Of a DNA stretch of 64,000 nucleotides, positions 15,903 to 59,100 are shown piece by piece. The notes beneath the pieces were generated by a model. The model worked only from the letters and a program-made list of their open reading frames with translations. It was not told where the DNA came from and did not search any database. The translations under genes were made by a program, and so were the position numbers. The first letter of the stretch is position 1, and every line of letters starts with the position of its first letter. Source of the DNA: Fimbriosthenelais zetlandica (taxonomy: Eukaryota). The stretch is from assembly GCA_977030845.1 (NCBI GenBank), contig OZ365113.1:18290001-18354000 (forward strand). The letters run 5' to 3'.

Positions 15903-18900
15903 TTAGTAACTTTTCTTTATTTCGTGAGGGAAGAATATTTTAGCAAGTTCCTTCTTGTTCACTTTGCCTAAGGCATTTTTCGGCATGTCGTCTATGATTT
16001 TCAGCACTGAAGGCACCTTATAGGAGGGGAGGACAGACGAAGCCCATGATTTGAACTCTGCCAGTGTGAGCGTTTCCCCGTCTCTTAAAACGACCAAGGC
16101 TGTCACTTTTTGTCCCCAGGTGAGATCTGGTAAACCAACCACAGCCACATCCACAATGCTTTGATGACTCAATAGATGGTGCTCTATTTCAAGAGCACTA
16201 ATTTTGTAACCACCACTTTTGAGGATGTCCACTGATGTCCGACCTAAGATCCTGTATGAACCGTCTTTATACACGGCAGTGTCACCTACAAAACAGTTAT
16301 TTAAAGGGCTTCTTGAGTAATTGACTACAATTTCACATTAAAGGTAGGGCTAATATCGCAAATAATAGTTTGCGATTGTTGACTATACTGATCATCTAAT
16401 ATTATAATAGTCCATCTCAAATGTCTAAATAAAAATGTATTTGTCATAATTTCTAGGATTCAAACCGACCTGTTTTGAACCAGCCGTCTTTGGTAAATTC
16501 TTCTCGGGTGGCTTCAGGTCGGCCCCAGTAACCGGAGAACAATCCAGGTCCACGCACAAGCAGCTCTCCTTCTCCCTCACAACCTGGTGCAAAAAGTATG
16601 GACATTTATCTCGCATTTTGAGAATAGCAAATAAAGGATCTCATGTAAGATTACACATACCAATATCATTTTCAGAGAAATATCTTTTACAAACAGAAAA
16701 TCTTAATATAAAAGATAGTGCATACATGTATTCTTAATCTACGTAAATGCAGAATGCAAATACTTAAATTCATTACCAGGGGTAACCTTGGTTGACTTGT
16801 GATCCCCTCTAGCGATGATATCATAGCCTTGGACAGAATACACGTTTGGTTTAGAGATGCAAACTTCAGTTCCAGGGAAAGGCGTGCCCACAGCACCTAG
16901 GAAGGAAATTTAAATCATATTTATGTCACTTTTATTTACCTTTGAGAACAAAATTCTCTTCCTATACTCTCTGGTCTGGCAAGGATTATTTTACCTGGAG
17001 TGCGAACACCTTTGAGTGGGTTGGTGAGAGCCATGCCTATCTCTGTCATGCCATATCGCTCTAGTAAACGGTGTCCAGTGATCTGCTCCCAGCGATTGAG
17101 GACCGGCTCAGGCAGGGCTGCTGAACCACTTACCATTAACCTGAGTGAGGTCATAACAAAATATTGGAAATAGTGATTTCATAAGTGAAAATTAAAATTA
17201 TTTAATAAGTTTCAATTTATATAGTAATAAGTAATACTGGTTAAGTAAATAAGGAATGAAAGAAAGGATAAATATAACCTCAATGTACATGAGTAGTGGT
17301 ACCTGATCTTGGTTGAGCAGGTAGCTTTTATGTAGTCTCTAGCTCGTTTAGTACCCCGACCGCGGCCAAATCGCTGGTCATATCGTTCAATGAGCTTGGC
17401 ATAGATTGTCGGTACAGCCATGTATACATTGATCCTCCTGGGGATATCAGGTGTGGAGGGTCCAAGCAGATGGGACCAGACCTGTGGTAGACACGATTTT
17501 CTTTGATACAGAAAAGTTCAAATCACGATACCTTATTTTCTGGTACATGTTATTATACAATTTACGGTACTCACTTCTACAGACTGATGGCTTTAAGGTA
17601 TGGCTTTTAAAAAGTATTCAATAAATATTTCTATATATTTTATATTAAACCACAGACTGATCTAAGATACCTTATCAGCATCAAACTTGGGCAGCATGAC
17701 ACAGGTAGCGCCTACATGAAGTGGCACCATGAGTAGATTGACGATACCATGGACGTGGTGGAGAGGTAGACTATGTAAGACCACATCATTAGACTTCCAG
17801 GCCCAACACTTGGTCATCCCAGCCACATGTACACCCAAACTGCCATGTGTATGGACAACACCCTGCCTCAAACATAAAACATTAATTAATACAATAATAC
17901 CTCACTCGAAAAATCCATTAATAATAAAATTATCCATAGGGTAATCATTTCACCTTTGGACGGCCTGTTGTCCCGCTGGTATATATAATGAGAGCAGATT
18001 TTCTCTTATATCTGCTCGCCTCTAATATCTGTTGATGGCGATTCTCTCGTTGACATCTCCTCTCTAATACTGCATTAAGTTCTGCTTCATCAATTAAGAT
18101 GTCATCTGAAAGACAAAGATCTTGAAATTACAAATTTGGTATTTTCCTACAGGATAAAGGTTATATTGAAAGAGACATATATGTAATTTATATTACCATA
18201 TTATATAATATTACATAGTGAGTCTAGATTAGTATTAAGATAGATGAATTCATGACTAACCTCCTTCAGACGTGTAGTCCTCTTTTCGGAGAACGAGTAA
18301 AGTAATGTCCAACTTCTTAACAATTTCTTCAACTTTTTCCGCAAGTTCTTCTGTCGTTATCACAAGCTTGCTCCCAGAATCAGAAATGACATATTCCAGT
18401 TCAGATGGTGGGTGGGTGGCACAGAGGGGGACAGCGATTCCATCACACATCCATGTGGCCCACTCACTTACCACATGTGAACCATTGTTAGGACAGAGAA
18501 AAGCCACTCTCTCTCCATTCAGTTCATCAGATCCAAACGCCTCAGTAATTTTGTCACACAAATTATGGGCTATCACTGACAGGTCCCGGTAAGTGTAAGC
18601 TTGGTGTTCATCGACTAGAGCCACCCTGTCGGGGAATTCTTTGGCCCGGAGAAAGACTGGGGTGAGGTGAGTTGGACTGCTCTTGATCTGGTACCAATGT
18701 GTAACCATTGACCGGGTGAAGAGATGTCCTAATATATTTGGCATCTTTTGGCAAGTAGGCCTAGGCCTAATGGTGTCAGTGATGTGAGAAGACAGATAAC
18801 GGCGTCTCAGATGAAGAACATTAACATGTCTACTTCTGGATGCTTTCATGGTGGAATTTCCTGAGTAACATCTTCCTAGGTGGAAATATGGCGTGCACAC

Positions 18901-18915
18901 TTTCCATGAAAACAT
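15903..18915 (-). CDS. ACSF3: Malonate-CoA ligase ACSF3 (mitochondrial acyl-CoA synthetase family member 3)
   Basis: Minus-strand exons give an N-terminal presequence-like region, then [105 protein letters not shown] and [12 protein letters not shown], all hallmark ACSF3 motifs. A non-coding first exon probably ends at a GTGAGT donor near 19216. Confidence 0.96.
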
Positions 18916-20654
18916 ATTTGCATTAATCCTAAAAAGAGATAAAAAAAAAAATTTAAAAAAAATCAGGTTACACGTAGTATAAGCCTATTACCGGTAATTT
19001 ATTACCGTAATTTATCCTACTACTAGGCCTTTAATATAGCCTACTTAGGACTTTAGGTCTTATAACAGGCCTATAGGCCTTATATTAACTCTAGGTTGGC
19101 TGGCTATAATCCACTATTAAAATCTGTCTGGAATCTTGATCATGTTAATTGTTATGACTATGAGTCAGGTTAGTTTAACTTTTCTATTCTTCTCATAAAA
19201 TCATACTCATACTCACAAATAAAAACAAGCGCGGATCCCTATTGTCCACAATATAGGACATGTAGATACCGGCATGTACTTTATCTGTCGATCTTAGCAA
19301 ACTGTGTGGGCCTACATGTGCGCCATGTTGATTTGAATGACCTTGACCTTAAACATAAACAACAACTAGGCCTACTATGTCTAGATGGCGTTAGTGTGCT
19401 CGAGGTGAACAGGCAGCGTTCGCCATGCGCTCGTCTAACATACAGCGTCCGCCATGCATTCCTGGACAGTCAAGAGCGCCCTGCATTCAAAGGCCAGCGC
19501 CCGGCATCTCGAGTGTAAAATAAAGGGCTGATTTTAAAAGATTATTGAAAATTTGTCTTCTCTGTCATTGTTTATAGGCCTACTATGCTATATTGACAAA
19601 TTCTAAGATAATCATTCAGACGTCAGACGTCAGTCCGAAAGATTTCTGGATGATTTTGGTGCTTTCCTGTAATGTAAAATGCTGAGCTATGCCCCAGTAC
19701 AGTCTGGTCAGGGATGGTCGATTTTCCATGGTCTGGCTATGATACAGTGCAGCCACCTAGTGTTTACCTTGTGCATCGAGAGTGAACTGAGCTCCGCCGC
19801 GCCTTTACCTCAGCGGTAAACCACCAGGTGCCAGCACTGTTTCTGTTTCAGACGGCGTTTTTAGATCTATTAAAGCACCCAGCCAGAATTGAAATCAGTT
19901 GGTAAATGTACATGGAAAATCTATTGCATACAAAAGAACTGAGCTACGCTGCCTGTAAACCTGTAAACGGCGAGAGAAATTAGAAGTGAGCGATAATAGG
20001 GGTTTTGGCAGATCCCATGCGACTACCCCACCACCGGCAAAAGCGGGAACTAATGTTCAATGCTAAGTGAATGCACAGACTATCCCCTCAGGGATCATTG
20101 TTTTGACTGTTGCCAGTAAAACTTTGTCTTATTTGTCAGTCTCAGTGAAATTTTGGCTCTGTCAGTAAAGTCGCCGTAAATGACTGTTTTCTTGAAATTG
20201 TCCGTAAAACTGGTTAAAAACAAATTTTAACATATTTTATCTAGTCAGAACTCGACATTTAGCCTACAATCTGACACTCCCATTTTGTTTTGCTATCACT
20301 TGGAAAATTCATTTGGTCAGACCACAGACTAATGGGGGGTTAGTATGTGATATAGCCTATATCCATGTGGCCCTAAACTAGCATAGGCCTACACTTTTTT
20401 TGTTAATTTCAGATAGGCCTATAGGCCTATGTTGTGGAAGCCTAGACAACCCCTAATTTATAATTATAAGTTTTTGTCAATTTAAGGTGAACTAGACAAT
20501 TTCAGGTCTTCAGGCGTCTGAGGCTAGGCAACTGCTGAATATTTGATAAAAGGGGCGGAAACCCTTTTTCATAGAGCATAGCTAGGTCTACCGTCAAGCA
20601 CTGAGCGATAGTTCACACTTATCAGCTCACTTCTGACTCCCGCCGGATGAATTG

Positions 20655-21064
20655 ATAGCTTAGTTGGTAGGGCGTTGGCTTTCCAGTTGGACGGTGTCTG
20701 GTTCGAGTCCCAGTCGTGGTAGTTCTTTTTCTTCCCGGTCAGGTGGGTTACAAAAGGGACGTAGATTGCACTGCCACCTGGTGTTTAGCCTACTTACAGT
20801 AGTTTCCCGCCAGATGACGCCACATTCTAGGGTCCAGGGTAAGTCCTCCGTGTTTCAGGCTTAGGATTACATAAAGCTTATGATGGGTGGGGTGCTTGCT
20901 TAGATAGTACCAGTCTTCATAGCTTAGTTGGTAGGGCCTTGGCTTTCCAGTGGGAAGGTGTGTGGTTCGAGTCCCAGTCGTGGTTGTTCTTTTTCTTCCC
21001 GGTCAGATGGGTTACAAAAGCCTATAGCTTAGTTGGTAGGGCGTTGACTTCCCTATTGGAAGGT
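20655..21064 (+). repeat. Type A tRNA-derived units: two 102-bp direct repeats (20655-20756, 20919-21020) and a 5' half copy (21024-21064)
   Basis: A box TAGCTTAGTTGG, B box GGTTCGAGTCC and tail TTCTTTTTCTTCCCGGTCAG(G/A)TGGGTTACAAAAG. The two full copies differ at about 6 positions and the anticodon stem does not pair. Confidence 0.8.
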
Positions 21065-21115
21065 CTTATGGGCGCCACCCAGCCAGCTCTACGTGGGATT
21101 ACATATAATACGTGA

Positions 21116-21188
21116 TCCGTCATAGCTCAGATGGTAGAGTGTTGGATTTCAAATCCAGGGGTTCTGTTTTCGAATCCCCTTTGGGAGA
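21116..21188 (+). pseudogene. tRNA-like cassette type B, copy 1, anticodon position TCA (21149-21151)
   Basis: A box TAGCTCAGATGG, D stem GCTC/GAGT, anticodon stem TTGGA/TCCAG with loop TTTCAAA, B-box-like TTCGAATCC and T-runs downstream. Acceptor and T stems are poorly paired. Confidence 0.7.
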
Positions 21189-21514
21189 ATGCTTTTTTGC
21201 TTTTGGCGCCTTATTCTGCAAACAAAAAGTAATCCGTCTCCAGTGCAGCCTCAAATCACCCACCATTCCCTAAAGAATTTTTATTAATGATTATCAAGTC
21301 CAAAAACTGGTTTTCCGACTATTTATTCCCCATAATTTAATAAACGTTTTGCCTCGGCAGCAGATGCAGCGCCACCAGAAGCCTCGGAAGCAGATGCAAA
21401 GGCAGCAGATGGAGGAGCAGCAGATGGAATGGCAGCAGATGGCAAAGCAGCAGATGGCAATGGGCGCCACTCAGCCAGTTTTAGCTTGTATAGGGAAACG
21501 GTTCCAGTATATAA

Positions 21515-21586
21515 GCCTTGATAGCTCAGATGGTAGGCTCTTGGCTTTGAAAGCCAAAGGTCCTGGGATCGAACCCCCTCTGGATC
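21515..21586 (+). pseudogene. tRNA-like cassette type C, copy 1, anticodon position TGA (21548-21550)
   Basis: TAGCTCAGATGG, perfect anticodon stem TTGGC/GCCAA with loop TTTGAAA, AAGGTCC variable region and GATCGAACC B-box variant. Acceptor stem is degenerate. Confidence 0.7.
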
Positions 21587-21992
21587 TATGTTTTCTCTTT
21601 TAAGCTTTTTGTTGCTGACTAACAATGATCGACTGCACAATCGGATTTTTCTGGCTGTTCCTCATCACTTAACCCATTTTTTAGCTTCCCTTCTTGAGAG
21701 ATCTCCAAACATTTAGCTTGTGGTAGGCCTACTTTAACAAGATCAAAATATTTCATAATTATAGGCCCTACAATAAGAGGGAAACATTTGGTGGTCCATG
21801 ACCTAAAAGGCTGCCACCTTCTGCTTGAGACATGAAGTAAAATCTCCCCACAATTAATTTCAATTAAAAGAAGGCAGATGACAGCACTAGAGTGGGGTTT
21901 CATCGCTTAATCCTCGGATGCCACATTCGCCAGCCAGACTGCAATAACGGGGGTAACAGAACTGGTTGTAGTTGATAGCCTAGTCCATGTGA

Positions 21993-22065
21993 TCCATCAT
22001 AGCTCAAATGGTAGAGTGTTGGATTTCAAATCCAGGGGTTCCGTTTTCGAATCCCCTTTGGGAGA
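21993..22065 (+). pseudogene. tRNA-like cassette type B, copy 2, anticodon position TCA (22026-22028)
   Basis: Near-identical to the copy at 21116. Confidence 0.7.
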
Positions 22066-22395
22066 ATGCTTTTTTGCTTTTGGCGCCTTATTCTGCAAAC
22101 AAAAAGTAATCCGTCTCCAGTGCAGCCTCAAATCACCCACCATTCCCTAAAGAATTTTTATTAATGATTATCAAGTCCAAAAACTGGTTTTCCGACTATT
22201 TATTCCCCATAATTTAATAAAAGTTTTGCCTCGGCAGCAGATGCAGCGCCACCAGAAGCCTCGGAAGCAGATGCAAAGGCAGCAGATGGAGTCCTGAGCA
22301 GCAGATGGAATGGCAGCAGATGGCAAAGCAGCAGATGGCAATGGGCGCCACTCAGCCAGTTTTAGCTTGTATAGTGAAACGGTTCCAGTATATAA

Positions 22396-22467
22396 GCCTT
22401 GCTAGCTCAGATGGTAGGCTCTTGGCTTTAAAAGCCAAAGGTCCTGAGATCGAACCCCCTCTAGATC
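22396..22467 (+). pseudogene. tRNA-like cassette type C, copy 2, anticodon position TAA (22429-22431)
   Basis: Same as the 21515 copy but the loop is TTTAAAA. Confidence 0.7.
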
Positions 22468-22585
22468 TAGGCCTATGTTTTCTCTTTTAAGCTTTTTGTT
22501 GCTGACTAACAATGGCAAAGCAGCAGATGGCAATGGGCGCCACTTTTAGCGTTTAGCTCTACGTGGGATTACTTATAATACGTGA

Positions 22586-22658
22586 TCCGTCATAGCTCAG
22601 ATGGTAGAGTGTTGGATTTCAAATCCAGGAGTTCTGTTTTCGAATCCCCTTTGGGAGA
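22586..22658 (+). pseudogene. tRNA-like cassette type B, copy 3, anticodon position TCA (22619-22621)
   Basis: Near-identical to the copy at 21116. Confidence 0.7.
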
Positions 22659-22969
22659 ATGCTTTTTTGCTTTTGGCGCCTTATTCTGCAAACAAAAAGT
22701 AATCCGTCTCCAGTGCAGCCTCAAATCACCCACCATTCCCTAAAGAATTTTTATTAATGATTATCAAGTCCAAAAACTGGTTTTCCGACTATATATTCCC
22801 CATAATTTAATAAACGTTTTGCCTCGGCAGCAGATGCAGCGCCACCAGAAGCCTCGGAAGCAGATGCAAAGGCAGCAGATGGAGGAGCAGCAGATGGCAA
22901 AGCAGCAGATGGCAATGGGCGCCACTCAGCCAGTTTTAGCTTGTATAGGGAAACGGTTCCGGTATATAA

Positions 22970-23041
22970 GCCTTGATAGCTCAGATGGTAGGCTCTTGGC
23001 TTTGAAAGCCAAAGGTCCTGGGATCGAACCCCCTCTGGATC
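22970..23041 (+). pseudogene. tRNA-like cassette type C, copy 3, anticodon position TGA (23003-23005)
   Basis: Essentially identical to the 21515 copy. Confidence 0.7.
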
Positions 23042-23425
23042 TATGTTTTCTCTTTTAAGCTTTTTGTTGCTTAAGGTGCTGGGATCAATTCCCATATTTC
23101 CCTAGGCCTATGCTTTTTCCTTTTTAGCACTTTGTTTGTAACTAATAATTATCAAGTGCTCAATATGTTTTTCTGGCTGTTTCTCGTAATTTTACGAATT
23201 TTAACTTTCCTGCTTAACTTTTCTTTATTTCTGAAATATGCTATATTGGCCTATATGGCATTTAAGTGGCAGCAGCAGATGCTGCAGGGGCAGGTGCAGC
23301 AGCAGCAGATGCACTAGCAGCAGGAGTTCAAGCTATTGAAGCTATCATGGGCGCCACTCAGCCAGCTTTACCTTGGATTAAATAACTATACCTTGTAGGC
23401 CTAGTGGAACAGCCGCAGTGTAGAA

Positions 23426-23497
23426 GCCTTGGTAGCTTATGTAGTAGAGTATTGGATTTGAAACACAAGGGTAACTTGTTCGAATCCCTTTTAGGCC
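23426..23497 (+). pseudogene. Diverged B/C-intermediate tRNA-like cassette, anticodon position TGA (23459-23461)
   Basis: Begins GCCTTGG like type C but continues TAGAGTATTGGATTTGAAA..GTTCGAATCCC like type B. Confidence 0.6.
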
Positions 23498-23822
23498 TAT
23501 GCCTTCTCACTTTTGGTGCCTGATTCTCTATGGAAAATCCTCACCTCCTCTCCCATTATATTTTAAAAAATTATCAAAACCTTTTCTGACGGTTTCTAAT
23601 ATTTTAACTAATTTTCTAACGTTTTGCCTCAGCAGCAGATGCAGCAGCACCAGAAGCCTCGGCAGCAGGTGCAGCGGTAGCAGATGTAGCCTTTGTAGGA
23701 GCAGCAGATGGAATAGCAGCAGATGGCAAAGCAGCAGATGGCGAGAGCCAGAGCCGAGAGCTTTATCTGAGAAATCTTACAAAACAAGCGTGTTGGGAAA
23801 TCGTTAGCACATGTAGGCCTAA

Positions 23823-23894
23823 ACCTTGATAGCTCAGATGGTAGGCTCTTTGGTTTGAAACCCAAAGGTCCTGAGATCGAACCCTCCTTTGGAT
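23823..23894 (+). pseudogene. Diverged type C tRNA-like cassette, anticodon position TGA (23856-23858)
   Basis: TAGCTCAGATGGTAGGCTC TTTGG TTTGAAA CCCAA AGGTCCTGAGATCGAACC. Confidence 0.65.
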
Positions 23895-24123
23895 CTATGT
23901 TTTCTCTTTTTAGCTATTTGTTGCTAACTAATAATGATCGACTGCACAATCGGTTTTTCTGCCTGTTCCTCATAGGCCTACGTTAACCCATTTTAGCTTC
24001 CCTTCTTGATAGATCTCCACACATTTAGCTTGTGACCCCCTAGCGTCTAAAGCACAAATTGGCCTCTATCACTCACTTCCGGTCTGATGCCCGTCAGATG
24101 CGAGAAAATTTGACCTCTAGAAA

Positions 24124-25519
24124 ATGGCCATGTTAGGTAAGTAAATCCTAATGTTTGGGTCCCAATAATTATTTTGCATTCCATCACTTGAATGTATTCA
24201 TAATCGTTGAATTAGGCATCGTTGATTGCTTTGAAAATGAGCAATGTATGAGACTGGTTGTCAAAACCACGTATTATCGCTCAAAGTTGTGCGCGTGTTT
24301 ATAAATCTTACGGACCCCTTATATTGCATTATTGGCCTTAACTTAATAAATACCGTTTCTGGATATCTTTTGGTGTCCCTAATATGACAGGCATACTTGA
24401 TTTTATTTTAGGTGTTGGAAGTTTATGTCGGCTAAACATCCGCCAGCTGAGCTACACAGCAGCTGTCTCAGCAATAAGTAAACCGCCAGGACAAATAGGA
24501 GAATGGAGGATAAAGTGAGTATGGCCCGGTAGACCATCCCTAGCTATTAAGCCGGGACTAGAGTTTTTCTGAAATAATTAATTTTCTGTGGAAAATGGAT
24601 GAAATACAATTGAGACAAGAGACTGAAAATAAATATGTTATCCTCATCAATTATTTCGAGCCCGTCTCAAATAATAAATTAATAGAATTGGCCTGGCAAA
24701 AACTCTAGCCCCCACCCACTTCGTATTCTAATGGTCTCCCACTAATATTGTTATCTTAGACTTACTGTTACTGTACAGAAAACATGTTCAACCGTTAATT
24801 CTTTATTTTATTTTCACAGGAGAGGTATGGGACCATGTGGAAATGAGTATGGGCCGTTAGCTGAGATACCGGATTGGTCTTATGCTGGTATGTTGATTGA
24901 TGATAATTAATCTACCCCCTGACAGTTCTTTTTTAAATATCGAAACTGCACGAAATGAAGGTACAACCTGTTACACTACCAGTGTACGATTTACTTTAAT
25001 CTCCATTTATATATTGATTTAACATCTCTATCAAAAATGACCCTAATTAGAGTATCACTGTATGGTACGCGTCCTAAAATATTTCGACTCGAGAACTCGT
25101 TCCTGGGACCTTAGTGGATGTCTTTATGTAAGAGATTTAAATATGGCAAAGGAACCGTGCCTACTAAAAGTGTTGATATCTATTTGTTTCATCTGTTTTA
25201 AATAGATGGACGACCAGCCCCGTTACGACCGAGACAAATTGAACGCCGACAAAAACAGATTGAAATGTGTGTAAGTATATTTTATCATTTTCTCGAGTTA
25301 CCAGGTACATAATAGAGAACATGTATGTTTATCAGATTTATCAGAAGTAGTCCTTGCGTTACATGATATTTTGTGGCATATTTATTACAGGAAAGAATCG
25401 TGCAGTTAACAAAAGAAGTAAAGTTTGCCAGAGAAAATCATGCTCGTAAGGAAGAGGCCAAGCGACAAGAAAAGGAGCGCTTTTTATCCCGTAAGCTACG
25501 ACCCAAGATTCAAATGTGA
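24124..25519 (+). CDS. MRPL52: Mitochondrial ribosomal protein L52 (mL52)
   Basis: Five exons starting at about 24124, 24412, 24820, 25207 and 25391, with stop at 25517-25519. They give [53 protein letters not shown]..KLRPK, which contains the conserved YGPL..[12 protein letters not shown] motif of mL52. Confidence 0.93.
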
Positions 25520-37700: not shown

Positions 37701-38278
37701 CGGTATTTTAATATACATCCCCCCTTAAACGGAAGACCGACTGTTTCCGGTTTCTGACCACTTTTTTTAGTCCCATTATTTTCTCATACAACAATTAGGG
37801 CAATGGGCCTTATGGGTTAACTTTGGCCCAATTTTTAATGGAAAAAAAAAGAAAATCAAATCAAATTTTTTATCGTCTTCTTTCGTACAGAATGTTTTGA
37901 TAGTCCTAGTTCACCTTTTCTCCACTAATTTCCTTGTTTCTGTTTTTTCTTGCCGCGACCGGGATTCGAACCCGCGCAGGCTGTAGTCCTGCACGCTAAC
38001 CATTGCGTCACCGAGTCCCATGATTCAGTGGCGCCGCCGGGCGGGGAACGGCGTCATCTTTGCAAAACAGACCCACCACTTCTATGGAGAACGACTGGCG
38101 CCACTGTGCGTAGTGTGATTAGGGGGTATTGTAATTTCATTTTTTTAAAGCAAAGGCTCACCTTATGTGCAGGAAACGCTATATCGCCAACCATTAGAGT
38201 AATATCACACAATGATTCTGTTAGCCTCAAGTTGTTCAAGCGACGCATAACCGCCGTACACACTTGTTTTTGATCCAT
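34773..38278 (-). CDS. BTB/POZ domain plus about 11 C2H2 zinc fingers transcription factor (ZBTB-like), about 910 aa
   Basis: Exons 38278-38162 (LNNLRLTESLCDITLMVGDIAFPAHK), 37577-37371 (CILAATSKFF..LILDFLYTG) and 37187-34773 (acidic linker, 11 CxxC..H fingers, with a TGVQSFKC linker). Confidence 0.92.
37951..38017 (-). pseudogene. Compact 67-nt tRNA-like element (SINE head or tRNA pseudogene) in ZBTB intron 1
   Basis: Minus strand reads GACTCGG TG ACGC AATGGTTA GCGT GCAGG ACTACAG CCTGC GCGGG TTCGAAT CCCGG TCGCGGC A, followed by an A-rich tail. Confidence 0.65.
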
Positions 38279-53915: not shown

Positions 53916-55374
53916 CTAATGACCGGATGCCTGTTTGCATACTACTTTGGCTCTGTGGCGGTGATCGTTACCGGACTCTGCGTCTGAACTGGAGGAGTCC
54001 GAGTCTGAACTGTTACTGTAGGCGCCAAGACCTGGCAGGACAGCAATAACTCGGGGGAGCTTATAATCGCGTTCTATGATAGTCTCTGAAACTGGAAGAA
54101 AAATGAGGTTATAAATAAAAATAGAGAATATGATTATATATATTCAGGACACTCAACCATTAATTAATTAAACTGACCTTCGTTTTTGTTTCCTGAGGTC
54201 TCATTGGCGCTAGTTTTCTGTTTTTTATCACTCGATTCTCCATCTCCTCTACTGAAAAAGAAAAACATGTAATTTAAGACCACACAAATAACATGTGAAT
54301 AATTCCATTTTGCCGTTCTCCACCCGTTTACATGTATATAGATTTACAATATTTGGTACTGGTACTTCAAGAAGATATTTGTGAGCTGTAGTATGAAAAG
54401 GATATTTAAGTACCTTTTTCTTTTGACGACCCCAGCTAATAGAGCTTGCTGTGATTTAGCACTTTTCGTTACTTGAGGTTTAGGATTCTTTTTCTCTGTT
54501 TTCTCCTCTAGTGCTGTCCGTGCAACTACTGCCTCCTGAAAACATGATTAAGAATGTTAGCACGAATGCACAATTTCAAAAAGTTCATTCTGCATAATCT
54601 CATTTATCTCTATATAATTTAGAAAAAATGAAATAGAATTTTACCCTGTATTCTCGCAGTACTGATTCATTCTCGTCTTCACGAGCTTGGTCTAGTTCTG
54701 TCTTTCTTTTACTGACGAAGTCCAGGAAGTCAGTCTCATCTTCACCTAATCCTTGAACTTGATTCCCTGAGAAAATAAAACATTTCTCCTTTATAATCCT
54801 AAAATTAACTTTATTATTTAAATAAGTGACGGTATATGCCGGCCACATTTTGTCTCATATTAGATCAGATCAATTTAGGAACTAGGGCCAACTAACGTAA
54901 TTTTTGGGTTTCGTCATATTCGTCATCTTTCTTCTGCTTCTGTTCTTGGAGTTTATCATATAAACTCCTTGTATCAACAACTTCTTCTGGGGCTTCTGAA
55001 ATACAAAAATTACATACGTAGGCCTAATGATCAATAAATAGGCTTATAAATAAATAAATCTGTCATTATAGCGGTATTTAATTATATTTTGGATAATAGT
55101 CAGGCTAAAAATAGAGGAGAGATCCATAACAATTAATAGGGCCTGGATGTATCTTTAAAACAAAATTTTGGATCTAAAATTTGGACCTTATAAATAACGG
55201 TAGCCTACTGTACCGGTATGTCAAATGTCGATTTAGACCTACGGTACCTATTGGATCATCTGCCTTCCGGACCTTATCCCATTCGGCTTGGCGAACTTTC
55301 CGCTTCTCTTCCAATTCACTTTCTGTCACAAAAGATTTGAATTGAGTAGCGGATTCACTACTAGTAGAACTCAT
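53916..55374 (-). CDS. PSME3IP1: PSME3-interacting protein (FAM192A/NIP30/PIP30)
   Basis: Exons give KSFVTESELEEKRKVRQAEWDKVRKADDP..DTRSLYDKLQEQK..GLGEDETDFLDFV and the C-terminal IAVLPGLGAYSNSSDSDSSS motif. Stop at 53916-53918. Confidence 0.94.
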
Positions 55375-55739
55375 GGTGGTGATCAGGCAGGCCTCAACCT
55401 TAGGCTAAAGGACACCTGAAAGTATATATCAATACATATTAACTAAAAAATTATTAAGCGTACCTTGTAGTTGTACAATAAATGTACCGGTATTAATTAT
55501 AAATGTAGGCATAGATGTAGGCTAGGCCTAGGCTAAAGACTGGGCTGACACTATTGTAGACAAAATATTCGCCTCGGGTCCCATTCCTGCTTTGAGTGGG
55601 GACAGCTATGGCCTATGCAGGCTAACACTGTAACAGTGACACACACTATTGTAGCCCGGGTATTCCATACTACATAGTAATCCCAGTACTATCCCATAGT
55701 AGGCCTATACTATAGGCTATACGGTGGCTCACAGTGTCA

Positions 55740-55808
55740 CACACTCCGCACAGTGGCGCTCCAGTCGTTCCTCCTTTGAACGACTGGAGCGCCACTGTGC
55801 GGAGTGTG
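55740..55808. repeat. Perfect 31-bp inverted repeat with a 7-nt loop
   Basis: CACACTCCGCACAGTGGCGCTCCAGTCGTTC-ctccttt-GAACGACTGGAGCGCCACTGTGCGGAGTGTG. Confidence 0.93.
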
Positions 55809-56163
55809 ACAGTGTCAGTGTCTATGGCCATTGCCAATGGAAGGGCCCAACTCTCTCTATTAAATCACCTATGATCTCGATTAAAGCTACTGGACCACAC
55901 TACATGGCTATCCTGTAGACCGATAGATGTCTACTGCAATCATAGAGTCTATTTCCCAGCAGAATACTCACTATTTGCAGAGAAAAACTTAAAATCAGAA
56001 GAGCGTGGATGCCAGAACGACTCACTTCATGGGCGCAGACATGTTTGTTTTCAATGACCGCTTACGTACCTGAAAACTATTTATTTCCTATGCTGTAAAC
56101 GGCCCCGTCGTACGTGCTTCCGCTTTAAATGGCGATGGAGAGTGCAGAACTTCAGATAACAAC

Positions 56164-59100
56164 ATGACATCGAAGGAGGCAGAAGTCAATGCCGAGGAGG
56201 CCTTCCGCAAACTCCAGCGGAAAATAGCCTCCTTGGGAATATCTGGAAGTGACCTTTCCTCACTTCATTCGTATCAACGCTTAACAGCTCCAAGAAGACC
56301 CATCTGGCCCTACGTTTGTACTTGTTTTGGCCTACTTCTGATCCTTTCATCTGTCGTCTTATTAATGCAATGGCCCGTTCAAAGAAAAACAGTATTTGAC
56401 TTGTGGTTCAATTTCAACGACATGGACATTGATAAAGAACACTGTCTGGTGGAACTACATGATGTTTTCTTGGATGTTGTGAGACCGCCTGTGGACTGTA
56501 GTATGTGCAGTCCCGTGCAGGAAGTGGATAGGATTTCTAACGTCACACCAGAATTATTTGAGGCCAAATATGCATACAGTGGTATTCCCATTGTCATTGT
56601 TGATGGCATGAAAAATTGGACTGCAAAAAATACATTTAGTTTTGAATTTTTCAAAAGTATCTATGGAGAAGACAGTCCAGCACTTCTGAACATTGAGGCT
56701 AATTGCCAATTTTTCCCCTACAAAACCAATTTTGGCAGTTTAGGGGAAGTTTTCAACATGACAGATGAAAGAGCTCATATGAAAGATGGAGCTGAACCCT
56801 GGTATATTGGTTGGTATGTAGGTTCTTCTACTTTATTTAATTTTGACATTTTGGTCTATTTCATCTGTCTTGGTATTTTTTCTTATGCCTAGGCCTATGT
56901 ATTTAATTATAGGCCTAGGTACATCAGGCCTCATTTAATTTCTCATTTTAATTCATGTACATATTGTAGGTAGGCCTAGGGCTAGGCCTACAACCAGCCC
57001 ATCATTCCATGCCTCCGTAGAGATGGATACTCTCCATAACTCAGATCACACTTCCACTAGAGTGTCAAGAGAGGGCATGAGAGGCCTCTCGCGACACTCT
57101 CGCAGCCTCTCGTGACACCCTTGTAGCCTCTGGTGGACTCGGCCTCTCTCGGCACCTTTGGACCATCATGGCAGTACGATACTCACGATGGCAGTAGGCC
57201 TACAACACTCACAATGGCTTGGCAGTAAAACAGTAGACATGGCACAGCTGTTGTGAGGTTGCAAGTCTCGTGCACTCGTGTATCAAACTCTTACTCTCCC
57301 ACAAGTGTCCACGACAGTCCCACGACAGTCCTACTGCCATCATGGTTCAAAGTGGCGAGAGAGGCCGAGAGTCTGTGAGGCTGTCACGAGAGGCCCCTCT
57401 CTTGGAAGTGAGATTCCCCTTGAGACCTTAATTAAGGCTTGGTCTTTTTTTAAAGGTGGGCGATGGCCAATTATACTGTGTGATAGCAGGGGCGGTTCTA
57501 GTATTTTGAAAAAAGAAATCCTTAAACTGGAAGGCTTGATGCTCCACGTGACAGTTTTAATCTCTAAGCTTAGGGAAGTAAATCAAATTCAAGGTTAACA
57601 TGTCTGTTTTATTTATCATACTTTCCCACAGCCTCCGTTTATAGCATCCCTCCAGGCTTGTGTATTAACTACTGAAAAAGTGTCTAGCCTTCAGGCTTCA
57701 TATTCATAACCTCTGCGAATATGGGCTAACGGTACTAAATTGATATTTAGTGCATGCAAATTGTGAACAATCTGTACCACCACGGCGGTGGAGTGTTTAG
57801 ACTGTGTGCCCCGTGTGTGGAAGGTCGCCGGTTCAAACCGCTGCCGGGTTATACCAGAGATTGAAAAAATGGGACTAGTGGCTCCCTCGATTAGCACTCA
57901 GCAAAGTACAAAGACTGGTCAACCTGGTGTCAGTATACAATATTGAATAATGTGAATTGAAATGTAAAATTGTTGAAAGCGACGTTAAACCCTATTCTGG
58001 TTTAATTTGTTCAGAAAACTTTCTGGTTTATAACAATCTTTCCGGTTTAATCTGTCCAGAATTGTTTAATTTGTCCGGTTTAATTTGCTCTTCGTCATAT
58101 AGGGTCAATCTGGACAAATTTAATACTGTAGCCTAAATAATCTGACTTAAATAGAATATATTGATCAGTTAAACTGATGTGTACCGGTAGTCACCCTAAT
58201 AAAGTCCTAAGTCTACTACCAGTTACGGTACTTCTCTACAGTCTGTTCACTCTAAGTTGATCCGAAACCACAGTACATATATATATATGGTGGTTTTGGA
58301 TAAACTTAGAGTGAATAGACTGTAGATACATGATTGATTAAAACTATTTAAAACACCTCACTAGAGCGACCCCAAACCCACCTACTGCCTCCAATCAAAT
58401 AGAGCCGGTAGGCGGACATTGCAAGGGGTAAACATCTCTCAATATACATCTCTCAGTGGGTGATTATATGGTAAGGAATTGTCATTTTGACATTTTACAT
58501 TTTGACCGGTGAGAAACAGGAAGCTAAAATATAGCTGAGCCTGCCTCTGTTTTAGACCACCAATACTATATAATAGGCTGCCTTTATTAATTATCGACGT
58601 AACATGTATGATTTCTCTAAAATTGTGCTTATAAAATGTATTTAAAAAAATGGTCAGATAGTCCCAAATGTGTGGACAGATAGTCTCTATTTTGTCCAGA
58701 TGGTCCCTTGCCCAGATCCTGACTTCTAACCCCGAGTCCCAACCCCCTCCCTTCTACCATTGTCCATCCAATAAGCATGAAAGTCTGCCAGCGAATATAA
58801 GCTACGACCCTGAATTAGAATTGACATGGTAGCCTAAATCCGGGAGGAAGATTCATAGAGGCGTACATTGACCCAACTGACATTATCACTCCTCTTCACT
58901 AGCTTCCTGGAGGGGCTTCACTGGGGATGAAGTTGAGGTTGAACGTTACCTCTAATCCCCACTCCCTCCCCCATCCCCAATCCCTCACACTCGCTCTCCT
59001 GTCTATCATTTTATCATTAGGAAATTATTAGGTCACCAATAGAAACTAATTCCACTGCCACTTTATTTGTATCTGAGGAATGTGGGAATAATGTCAATGT

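What the first reader, a model, noticed from the sequence alone, without database searches (positions are those of the whole stretch)
20655..24035. Recently expanded higher-order array of Pol III-type tRNA-like cassettes interleaved with a minisatellite, inside a divergent promoter interval
Seen: 11 tRNA-like cassettes (3 type A including one partial, 3 type B, 4 type C, 1 B/C intermediate), all on the + strand. Most B/C cassettes are preceded by ATGGGCGCCAC(T/C)CAGCCAG and followed by T-runs. They form a B-C dimer repeated three times near-identically plus one diverged copy. A boxes, D arms (type B) and anticodon arms persist while acceptor and T stems are broken. Established: A and B boxes recruit TFIIIC, and tDNA or extra-TFIIIC sites can act as chromatin boundaries. 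Inference: this is not a tRNA gene cluster but a composite, tandemly amplified module. It could be a Pol III ncRNA unit, a boundary/enhancer element separating ACSF3 from MRPL52, or a tandem TE derivative. It is the main unexplained structure in the window and may be an undescribed system.
Basis: partly seen in the sequence, partly recalled or inferred. Interest (0 to 1): 0.8.

Follow-up and report, generated by a model that had tools for sequence, protein, structure and literature searches.

The report
Tandem array of decayed tRNA-like repeats
A 3.4-kb stretch between two housekeeping genes of an invertebrate is a locally duplicated array of worn-out tRNA-like repeat units with a small minisatellite, a kind of repeat already described in molluscs, and nothing here shows that it does a job.

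Summary
Eleven tRNA-like heads lie on the + strand at 20655-23898, plus a twelfth fragment near 23066. The 19-mer, the 15-nt minisatellite and the three near-identical B-C dimers (97.2-99.2%) are all real. None of the heads is a valid tRNA.

All types are diverged head-to-tail copies of one unit of about 0.4 kb: 19-mer, leader, head, T-run, body, minisatellite. The array is bracketed by direct copies of a promoter-proximal motif that occurs only three times in the window. It looks as if it grew in place, splitting a compact ACSF3-MRPL52 bidirectional promoter.

A and B boxes keep the tRNA spacing of 44 nt and every head is followed by a T-run, so Pol III/TFIIIC binding is plausible. However, the RNAs fold no better than shuffles, and in the young copies the heads vary more than the rest, so there is no sign of selection.

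I found no copies elsewhere and no sequencing runs were listed, so dispersion, transcription and copy number are untested. Tandem SINE arrays in bivalves and SINE-derived satellites are published. Other scan notes report similar arrays elsewhere in this genome, some attributed to Helentron-type transposons; those terminal hallmarks were not found here.

Verdict: a real, ordinary member of a known kind. A boundary function remains an open minority reading.

The parts
19983..19995 (-). Copy 1 of the motif TATC(N0-2)CTCACTTC, pointing towards ACSF3. Candidate ACSF3 core-promoter or TSS element, about 1.07 kb upstream of the ATG; a possible short non-coding exon and intron lie between.
   Evidence: 3 matches in the window, 0.01 expected; sequence: possible donor after the motif, strong acceptor before the ATG at 18915
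20620..20650 (+). Left direct repeat at the edge of the array: motif copy 2 (20620-20633) followed by the 13-mer TCCCGCCGGATGA (20638-20650).
20652..20756 (+). Unit A1: tRNA-like head (20655-20725, perfect B box at 20700) plus a T5 run. The 13-mer is repeated at 20805-20817 (12/13), so A1 is flanked by short direct repeats.
   Evidence: (D8)
20916..21020 (+). Unit A2, 93% identical to A1.
21024..21064 (+). Unit A3: a partial head (A box and anticodon region only), joined to the 19-mer.
21068..21722 (+). Young dimer 1, the only complete one. It holds the 19-mer, B1 head (21122-21190), T6 run, body, minisatellite (21353-21459), a second 19-mer (21460-21478), C1 head (21521-21590) and the C body ending in a 44-nt 3' module (21679-21722).
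21723..21998 (+). Spacer after C1. It is only weakly like the A-type spacer (not significant) and carries an A-box-like remnant near 21975.
21999..22513 (+). Young dimer 2: B2, minisatellite, 19-mer (22341-22359) and C2. C2 is truncated in its body at 22513, carries a 6-nt TAGGCC insertion at 22468, and has a 4-nt insertion in the minisatellite.
22514..23071 (+). Young dimer 3. A hybrid junction (end of the minisatellite, 11 bases of the 19-mer, 13 bases of C-type leader) is followed by B3, a minisatellite one 15-mer shorter, the 19-mer (22915-22933) and C3, which is truncated at about 23071.
23066..23346 (+). Unit D. It is 5'-truncated (T arm only), has a C-like body 67-68% identical to C1/C4, and has its own minisatellite (23255-23340).
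23347..23745 (+). The head at 23432-23500 is 72% identical to B1, the body 58%, and the minisatellite (23630-23745) 89%.
23746..24034 (+). Unit C4. Its leader has diverged, but head and body are 86-93% identical to C1, and it ends in the same 44-nt 3' module (23991-24034).
   Evidence: (D9)
24067..24101 (+). Right direct repeat: motif copy 3 (24067-24079, continuing as an ETS-like CTTCCGG) and CCCGTCAGATGC. It lies 45 nt before the MRPL52 ATG at 24124 and is the presumed MRPL52 core promoter.

Best explanation
The stretch is a satellite-like tandem array of decayed tRNA-derived Pol III cassettes of mobile-element or tRNA-pseudogene origin, and it grew in place.

An ancestral unit of about 0.35-0.45 kb consisted of a junction motif, a leader, a tRNA-like head with A and B boxes, a T-run, a short body and a 15-nt minisatellite. 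It sat just downstream of the MRPL52 core-promoter motif of a compact ACSF3-MRPL52 bidirectional promoter.

Unequal recombination between short direct repeats at its edges multiplied it head to tail. The copies diverged into types A, B, C and D, and part of the junction expanded into the minisatellite. Recently a B-C dimer was duplicated to three copies, with deletions at microhomologies truncating the inner ones.

Shown: homology of all units, the dimer structure, the truncations, the bracketing repeats, the intact promoter boxes and terminators, and the lack of tRNA function. Inferred: the order of events; that the heads still bind TFIIIC/Pol III and give RNAs of about 80-100 nt; and that the array is a selectively neutral by-product. 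Whether the founding unit was a SINE, a tRNA pseudogene or the cargo of a rolling-circle element is unresolved.
For: All units align over leader, head, trailer, body and minisatellite. They are head to tail on one strand, with spacings of 98-478 nt between successive heads. The young dimers are 97.2-99.2% identical and differ by a 15-nt, a 4-nt and a 6-nt indel. C2 and C3 are truncated at different points and fused through hybrid junctions, as expected from unequal or illegitimate recombination. The motif TATC(N0-2)CTCACTTC occurs only 3 times in 64 kb against 0.01 expected: once facing ACSF3, and once at each edge of the array facing MRPL52. The 13-mer TCCCGCCRGATGA flanks A1 on both sides, which matches the TSD1-(SINE-TSD1)n arrays reported in a clam (PMC11481361). 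No head is a tRNA. A box and B box start 44 nt apart and are the best-kept columns across old lineages. The RNA folds have z-scores from -0.9 to +0.7. Among the young dimers the heads vary more than the rest, 7/126 against 5/364 columns, p=0.016.
Against: No copy of the unit was found anywhere else, so a mobile-element origin is inferred from form, not shown. T5-T6 runs directly after each head would stop Pol III before the body, which is unlike a working SINE and more like a tRNA gene. Between old lineages the head (76-78% B against C) and the minisatellite (89% B1 against old B) are better kept than the body (43-58%). That could mean past or present constraint rather than gene conversion. 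The match between the left and right flanks is short (13/14 plus about 13/17 bases; 5 of 300 shuffles reach the score), and the motif pattern was written after I had seen the matches.
Confidence: 0.65

Rival explanations
1. The array is one or two copies of a non-autonomous Helentron-type rolling-circle transposon (HINE). Its internal tandem repeats are tRNA-Ser-like cassettes, and it inserted next to the MRPL52 promoter.
For: Unverified scan notes report such elements with about 200 and about 900 copies elsewhere in this genome (s1-203921, s1-210712, s1-223625). ARAGORN at a relaxed threshold calls type C tRNA-Ser(tga). Published HINEs carry short satellite-like arrays next to a microsatellite, and tandem whole elements have inner copies truncated at the 3' end (PMC7492417). 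That pattern matches C2 and C3 here, and the complete 44-nt 3' module occurs twice (D9).
Against: No inverted match of 11 nt or more (at most 1 mismatch) links the candidate right module to any left sequence, apart from trivial TAGGCCTA palindromes. The 3' module forms no hairpin, with z +0.4 to +1.2. The junctions between copies restart at different points. The array is bracketed by direct repeats, whereas Helitron-type elements make no target duplication (PMC7492417). No second copy lies in the other 60 kb.
Confidence: 0.17
2. The array is a co-opted chromatin boundary. Multiple TFIIIC-binding B boxes, plus CTCF-core-like motifs in the minisatellite, would insulate the ACSF3 and MRPL52 promoters from each other.
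For: Ten heads keep A and B boxes at tRNA spacing. Of the 25 matches in the window to the vertebrate CTCF core at 2 mismatches or fewer, 16 lie in 19750-23744, and both 1-mismatch matches lie at 19821(+) and 20771(-). The minisatellite is the best-kept part between B1 and the old B unit, at 89%. Precedents exist: a human tRNA tandem repeat with a CTCF motif (PMC4041453) and mouse B2 SINE boundaries (PMC8136502).
Against: The motif matches are copies of one repeat and so are not independent. The consensus is a vertebrate one recalled from memory. The copy number changed very recently and the heads of the young copies are not conserved. A distant species has neither the array nor MRPL52 within 10 kb upstream of ACSF3. 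There are no occupancy or expression data.
Confidence: 0.1
3. The array is a cluster of Pol III genes for a tRNA-like small RNA that is itself functional, comparable to tandemly repeated SINE-derived small-RNA genes.
For: Every cassette has an A box, a B box and a terminator within about 25 nt of the head. One compensatory change separates the B and C anticodon stems, A-T against C-G.
Against: No fold is more stable than shuffles. The acceptor and T stems are broken. Types A, B and C differ by 22-36% in the head. The young heads accumulate more changes than their flanks.
Confidence: 0.04
4. The repeated dimers are an assembly artefact.
For: Near-identical repeats of about 0.9 kb are hard to assemble. 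No reads could be laid on the region.
Against: The three dimers differ by private substitutions, by 4-, 6- and 15-nt indels and by different truncation junctions. An assembler duplication would not create these differences.
Confidence: 0.03

Closest known systems
Tandem-like SINE arrays in bivalve genomes, especially the blood clam Scapharca broughtonii (PMC11481361)
   Same: Both have tRNA-related heads and direct head-to-tail arrays (4-15 units in the clam). Both have units truncated at fixed points and separated by a repeated short flank, the TSD1-(SINE-TSD1)n form. Both lie in or near genes, and unequal recombination is the proposed origin. Scan notes also report palindromic versions elsewhere in this genome.
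   Different: No dispersed parent SINE could be shown here. Each head is followed at once by a Pol III terminator. There is a 15-nt minisatellite and a two-type (B-C) higher-order period. No recognised conserved SINE body domain could be tested.
SINE-derived satellites (sSats) of squamate reptiles (PMC10702118) and the limpet PcH-Sat derived from a Nin-SINE (PMC11121367)
   Same: Both are tandem repeats built from parts of a SINE, with dimeric elongation and incomplete homogenisation.
   Different: Those families occupy many loci, often subtelomeric, with up to 1000 units. This is a single short array in a promoter interval.
Helentron-associated interspersed elements (HINEs) carrying satellite-like arrays in oyster and clam (PMC7492417, PMC3879986)
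   Same: Both have a short internal tandem array adjoining a short-period repeat, and inner copies truncated at the 3' end. The element type is common in bivalves.
   Different: Subterminal inverted repeats and a 3' hairpin were looked for and not found. Direct repeats flank the array.
tDNA / extra-TFIIIC insulators and the human 1q23.3 tRNA tandem repeat with a CTCF motif (PMC4041453; B2 SINE boundaries, PMC8136502)
   Same: Both have clustered A/B-box elements between Pol II genes, with a CTCF-like motif repeated alongside the tRNA-like units.
   Different: Those contain real tRNA genes or have measured occupancy and activity. Here there are only sequence motifs.

Membership tests
Functional tRNA gene cluster | Cloverleaf with paired acceptor and T stems, scoring above detection thresholds | tested here: not met
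   ARAGORN finds 0 genes; only C1 and C3 appear once the threshold is lowered to 90%. Rfam tRNA scores 21-23.5 bits against a gathering score of 29, on B copies only.
tRNA-derived SINE | tRNA-related head with internal A and B boxes | tested here: met
   A and B boxes start 44 nt apart in all full heads, and B boxes have 0-2 mismatches.
tRNA-derived SINE | Pol III can read through the body to a 3' tail (no early terminator) | tested here: not met
   T4-T6 runs lie within about 25 nt after every head.
tRNA-derived SINE | Many dispersed copies flanked by target-site duplications | not testable with these tools
   No genome access. No copy lies in the other 60 kb. A1 alone has 13-nt flanking direct repeats, 12/13.
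HINE / Helentron non-autonomous element | 5' and 3' subterminal inverted repeats | tested here: not met
   No inverted 11-mer (at most 1 mismatch) pairs the candidate right module with any left sequence.
HINE / Helentron non-autonomous element | Palindrome forming a stem-loop at the 3' end | tested here: not met
   The 3' modules at 21660-21725 and 23972-24037 fold no better than shuffles. Only an 8-nt GAGATCTC is present in C1.
HINE / Helentron non-autonomous element | Insertion at TT without target duplication | tested here: inconclusive
   The array is bracketed by direct repeats of about 31-35 nt. No empty site is available.
Satellite-like higher-order tandem repeat | Head-to-tail homologous units with a multi-unit period more homogeneous than the single units | tested here: met
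   B against C heads are 76-78% identical, but dimer against dimer is 97-99%.
tDNA / ETC chromatin boundary | TFIIIC occupancy and enhancer-blocking or barrier activity | not testable with these tools
   Only B-box motifs are present. No sequencing runs were listed.

The most novel reading that the evidence does not exclude
An ancestral compact bidirectional promoter had its ACSF3 and MRPL52 motif copies 625 bp apart. It was split by an expanding array of TFIIIC-binding tRNA relics whose junction grew into a minisatellite of CTCF-core-like motifs. The array is now kept as a composite Pol III/CTCF-type insulator, one instance of a recurrent way of building boundaries from tRNA-derived repeats in this lophotrochozoan genome.
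Probability: 0.1. Interest if true: 0.6.

Novelty: new member of a known kind. Interest (0 to 1): 0.3.

Why it matters
As it stands, this is a clean, dated example of how a tRNA-derived repeat turns into a small higher-order satellite inside a housekeeping promoter interval. The founding flank is still visible on both sides. This is useful for repeat annotation: these heads should not be called tRNA genes. It also serves as a worked case of the TE-to-satellite transition in a lophotrochozoan.

It would matter more if the array, and the similar ones the scan noted elsewhere in this genome, proved to bind TFIIIC or CTCF. That would parallel the mouse B2 SINE and human tDNA boundaries in a distant animal lineage.

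Tried and rejected
- **Sequencing runs.** Two look-ups, on the array and on ACSF3 exon 1, listed none. No reads could therefore be laid, and neither transcription nor copy number was checked.
- **Dispersed copies.** blastn and a head profile against the rest of the window found none. A translated search with a 113-aa ORF across the unit found none. A head pattern in metagenome contigs gave 0 hits. The 19-mer gave 9 hits, all in GC-rich microbial contigs sharing only 19-25 nt, so these are chance matches.
- **Orthologous interval.** The closest ACSF3 relative sits on a 1.8-kb contig. A related 1.57-Mb contig (cupin gene 70% identical) is about four times more expanded, so walking 30 kb or more was not feasible. 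A distant ACSF3 locus, L003, shows no MRPL52 and no tRNA-like array in its 10 kb upstream; this is weak evidence only.
- **Coding reading of the minisatellite.** ORFs exist in several frames, but there are no canonical splice sites and B2 carries a 4-nt insertion. Rejected.
- **Homology of the C1 tail (21723-21998) to the left flank or the A spacer.** Not significant, z 1.4-2.0.
- **Upstream-motif link to the tRNA-like relic at 38 kb.** Only the T arm is significantly similar.
- **Helentron architecture.** Not found.
Full report
**What is there**

Eleven tRNA-like heads lie in register on the + strand, at 20655, 20919, 21024 (partial), 21122, 21521, 21999, 22402, 22592, 22976, 23432 and 23829.

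A profile built from the heads recovers these eleven (E 1e-6 to 1e-23; the profile was built from ten of them) and nothing else in the 64 kb. It also gives a non-significant hit (E 0.59) to a twelfth fragment, T arm only, at 23073-23095.

The 19-mer ATGGGCGCCACYCAGCCAG is present five times exactly, against none expected. Tandem Repeats Finder shows a 15-nt minisatellite of the type GCAGCAGATGG plus four bases, in five blocks.

- The ORF at 18256-18915 on the minus strand carries an AMP-binding domain, and a 37%-identical hit is named ACSF3 by its source.
- Three exons at 24820-25519 match colinear parts of the Pfam family MRPL52. The ATG is at 24124.

**They are not tRNAs**

ARAGORN finds no tRNA gene in the whole window. 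Only when its threshold is lowered to 90% does it call C1 and C3, as a 72-nt 'tRNA-Ser(tga)' without the long variable arm that a eukaryotic tRNA-Ser has (established knowledge). Rfam's tRNA model reaches 21-23.5 bits on the three B copies only, below its gathering score of 29, with unpaired acceptor positions.

**One unit, many versions**

Multiple and pairwise alignments show that types B, C, the 'B/C intermediate' and fragment D are homologous over their whole length. The shared plan is: 19-mer, a leader of 35-40 nt, the head, a T-rich trailer, a body of about 100 nt or more, and the minisatellite.
- The 'intermediate' is simply an old B-type unit.
- D is a C-like unit that still has a minisatellite, so the ancestor of C had one as well.
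- Type A shares the head (64-67% identity) and the T-run with B and C. Its flanks are too diverged to align.

The three young B-C dimers are 99.2, 98.1 and 97.2% identical, whereas B and C heads differ by 22-24%. This is a true higher-order period.

The inner copies are damaged in different ways:
- C2 stops in its body at 22513 and is joined to the end of a minisatellite, 11 bases of the 19-mer and a piece of C-type leader.
- C3 stops at about 23071 and is fused to the middle of the D head.

The fourth dimer is a mosaic: B head 72%, body about 50%, minisatellite 80-97%, C head and body 86-93%. Such heterogeneous junctions and mosaic identities are what unequal crossing-over, small deletions at microhomology and gene conversion produce. 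They also argue against an assembler-made duplication.

**How the array sits in the promoter interval**

The motif TATC(N0-2)CTCACTTC occurs three times in the window against 0.01 expected. I wrote the pattern after seeing the matches, so the test is post hoc.
- One copy (19983-19995) points towards ACSF3. On the minus strand it is followed by a possible splice donor, and a strong acceptor sits just before the ACSF3 ATG. This suggests a short non-coding first exon.
- The second copy (20620-20633) lies at the left edge of the array.
- The third copy (24067-24079) lies at the right edge, 45 nt before the MRPL52 ATG, where it continues as an ETS-like CTTCCGG.

Each of the two rightward copies is followed by a related CCCG.C.GATG segment. 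The 13-mer TCCCGCCRGATGA recurs immediately after unit A1, matching 12 of 13 bases.

The simplest reading is that ACSF3 and MRPL52 once shared a compact bidirectional promoter with the two motif copies about 625 bp apart. A tRNA-derived unit then landed or arose just downstream of the MRPL52 motif. Unequal recombination between the short repeats at its edges multiplied it, carrying a copy of the promoter-proximal segment to the far side.

This is the TSD1-(SINE-TSD1)n form described for tandem SINE arrays in the blood clam (PMC11481361). The junction motifs in the later units (CAGATGACGCCAC after A1, GGATGCCACATTC in the C1 tail, and CAGATGGCAATGGGCGCCAC in the B and C units) look like descendants of that segment. 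The minisatellite looks like its slippage product. This last step is inference from short similarities that are not individually significant.

**Would it work as anything?**

At the DNA level the heads keep what Pol III needs. The A box (TAGCT.AG.TGGTAG) and the B-box core start 44 nt apart, and they are the best-conserved columns across the five old lineages. B boxes carry 0-2 mismatches. A run of four to six T follows within about 25 nt. From established knowledge of type 2 Pol III promoters, binding of TFIIIC and synthesis of 80-100-nt RNAs are plausible.

Nothing suggests that the RNAs matter:
- Six representative transcripts fold no better than dinucleotide shuffles, with z between -0.9 and +0.7.
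- Among the three young dimers the heads carry 7 variable columns in 126, against 5 in 364 elsewhere (Fisher p = 0.016). This is the opposite of purifying selection.
- Five of the seven head changes are G/A differences outside CpG. Transcription-associated mutation is a possible cause, but the sample is tiny.

The immediate terminators also mean the unit as a whole could not be a working SINE. It looks more like a tRNA gene relic with its flanks, or a repeat multiplied only at the DNA level.

**The boundary idea**

The vertebrate CTCF core consensus, recalled from memory, has only two matches with at most one mismatch in the window. Both lie in this interval: 19821 on the + strand and 20771 on the - strand, against 0.26 expected. 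At two mismatches or fewer, 16 of 25 matches lie between 19750 and 23744, mostly as GCAGCAGATGGCAA in the minisatellite. These are copies of one repeat and so are not independent. The motif of this animal's CTCF is unknown and there are no occupancy data. The idea stays a minority reading, with precedents in a human tRNA tandem repeat that carries a CTCF motif (PMC4041453) and in mouse B2 SINE boundaries (PMC8136502).

**The Helentron lead**

After I had formed the reading above, earlier notes of this scan reported non-autonomous Helentron-type elements with tRNA-Ser- or tRNA-Leu-like cassette arrays elsewhere in this genome. They also reported a second '11-cassette' array between two other genes, which a follow-up agent judged an ordinary tRNA-pseudogene cluster. 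These are unverified AI notes.

I tested the published HINE architecture (PMC7492417) on this locus:
- No subterminal inverted repeat pairs the candidate right module with any left sequence.
- The 44-nt 3' module forms no hairpin.
- The array is bracketed by direct repeats.

What does fit is that the inner copies are 3'-truncated and that a short-period repeat adjoins the cassettes. I therefore keep a Helentron-borne origin as the main rival (0.17) and leave the source of the founding unit open.

**What could not be done**

- No sequencing run was listed for the array or for ACSF3 exon 1, so transcription, copy number and assembly could not be checked with reads.
- No copy was found outside the locus by any route open to me. 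These routes do not include this genome, so dispersion is untested.
- The best named relatives of a cupin-domain gene in the window are bivalves, at about 50% identity. The organism is a lophotrochozoan without a close named relative in the searched collection.
- A distant ACSF3 locus has neither MRPL52 nor an array within 10 kb upstream.

**Verdict**

Tandem SINE arrays and SINE-derived satellites are published (PMC11481361, PMC10702118, PMC11121367), and the scan has met similar arrays elsewhere in this genome. I classify it as a new member of a known kind, with interest 0.3.

Noticed in passing
window, 27 sites; 14 of them in 18756-23980 and 8 in 55019-57202: The 8-bp palindromes TAGGCCTA (27 sites, 0.94 expected) and TACCGGTA (14 sites, about 18 times over expectation) are by far the most over-represented palindromic 8-mers, and TAGGCCTA clusters in two stretches, the ACSF3-MRPL52 interval and 55.0-57.2 kb. 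Inside the array TAGGCCTA behaves as a filled/empty site between near-identical units. C1 has GGATC-TATG where C2 has AGATC-TAGGCC-TATG (22468). The same holds before the C4 head (23814), and at the same spot in D (23103) and the old B unit (23492). This looks like TA+GGCC+TA, either a transposon excision footprint or a 6-nt insertion process at TA.
   Followed up: partly
window 37960-38030, minus strand: Another tRNA-like relic lies in intron 1 of the BTB-zinc-finger gene. It has a perfect B box (GGTTCGAATCC) and an A-rich tail, and ARAGORN does not call it. Its T arm and 3' side resemble type A (17/20 bases; 1 of 500 shuffles reaches the score). A GGCGCCACT motif and an inverted repeat lie just upstream, but that similarity to the array is not significant.
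   Followed up: partly
window 19740-19845: A 106-nt hairpin-forming inverted repeat (DNA fold z -2.3). Both its arms, and a third copy at 20766-20786 inside unit A1, contain CTCF-core-like CCACC(A/T)GGTG motifs. It may be a small MITE-like insertion between the two promoters.
   Followed up: partly
window 19983-19995 (-), 20620-20633 (+), 24067-24079 (+): A shared 13-14-nt motif, TATC(N0-2)CTCACTTC, is found only at these three places in the 64 kb. It is a candidate core-promoter element of both ACSF3 and MRPL52, and it suggests ACSF3 has a short non-coding first exon about 1 kb upstream of its ATG.
   Followed up: partly
window 21106-23071 (three young dimers): Substitutions among the young copies are concentrated in the tRNA-like heads (5.6% of columns against 1.4%), and 5 of 7 are G/A differences outside CpG. 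This may be a trace of transcription-associated mutation at active Pol III units. The sample is very small.
   Followed up: no
L002 (ENA contig ctg38705, 1.57 Mb) against window 54641-56822: A related unannotated genome shares the cupin-domain gene (73% nucleotide, 70% protein identity) and its upstream neighbour, but the spacing is about four times larger. That 20-kb locus holds only one TAGGCCTA.
   Followed up: no
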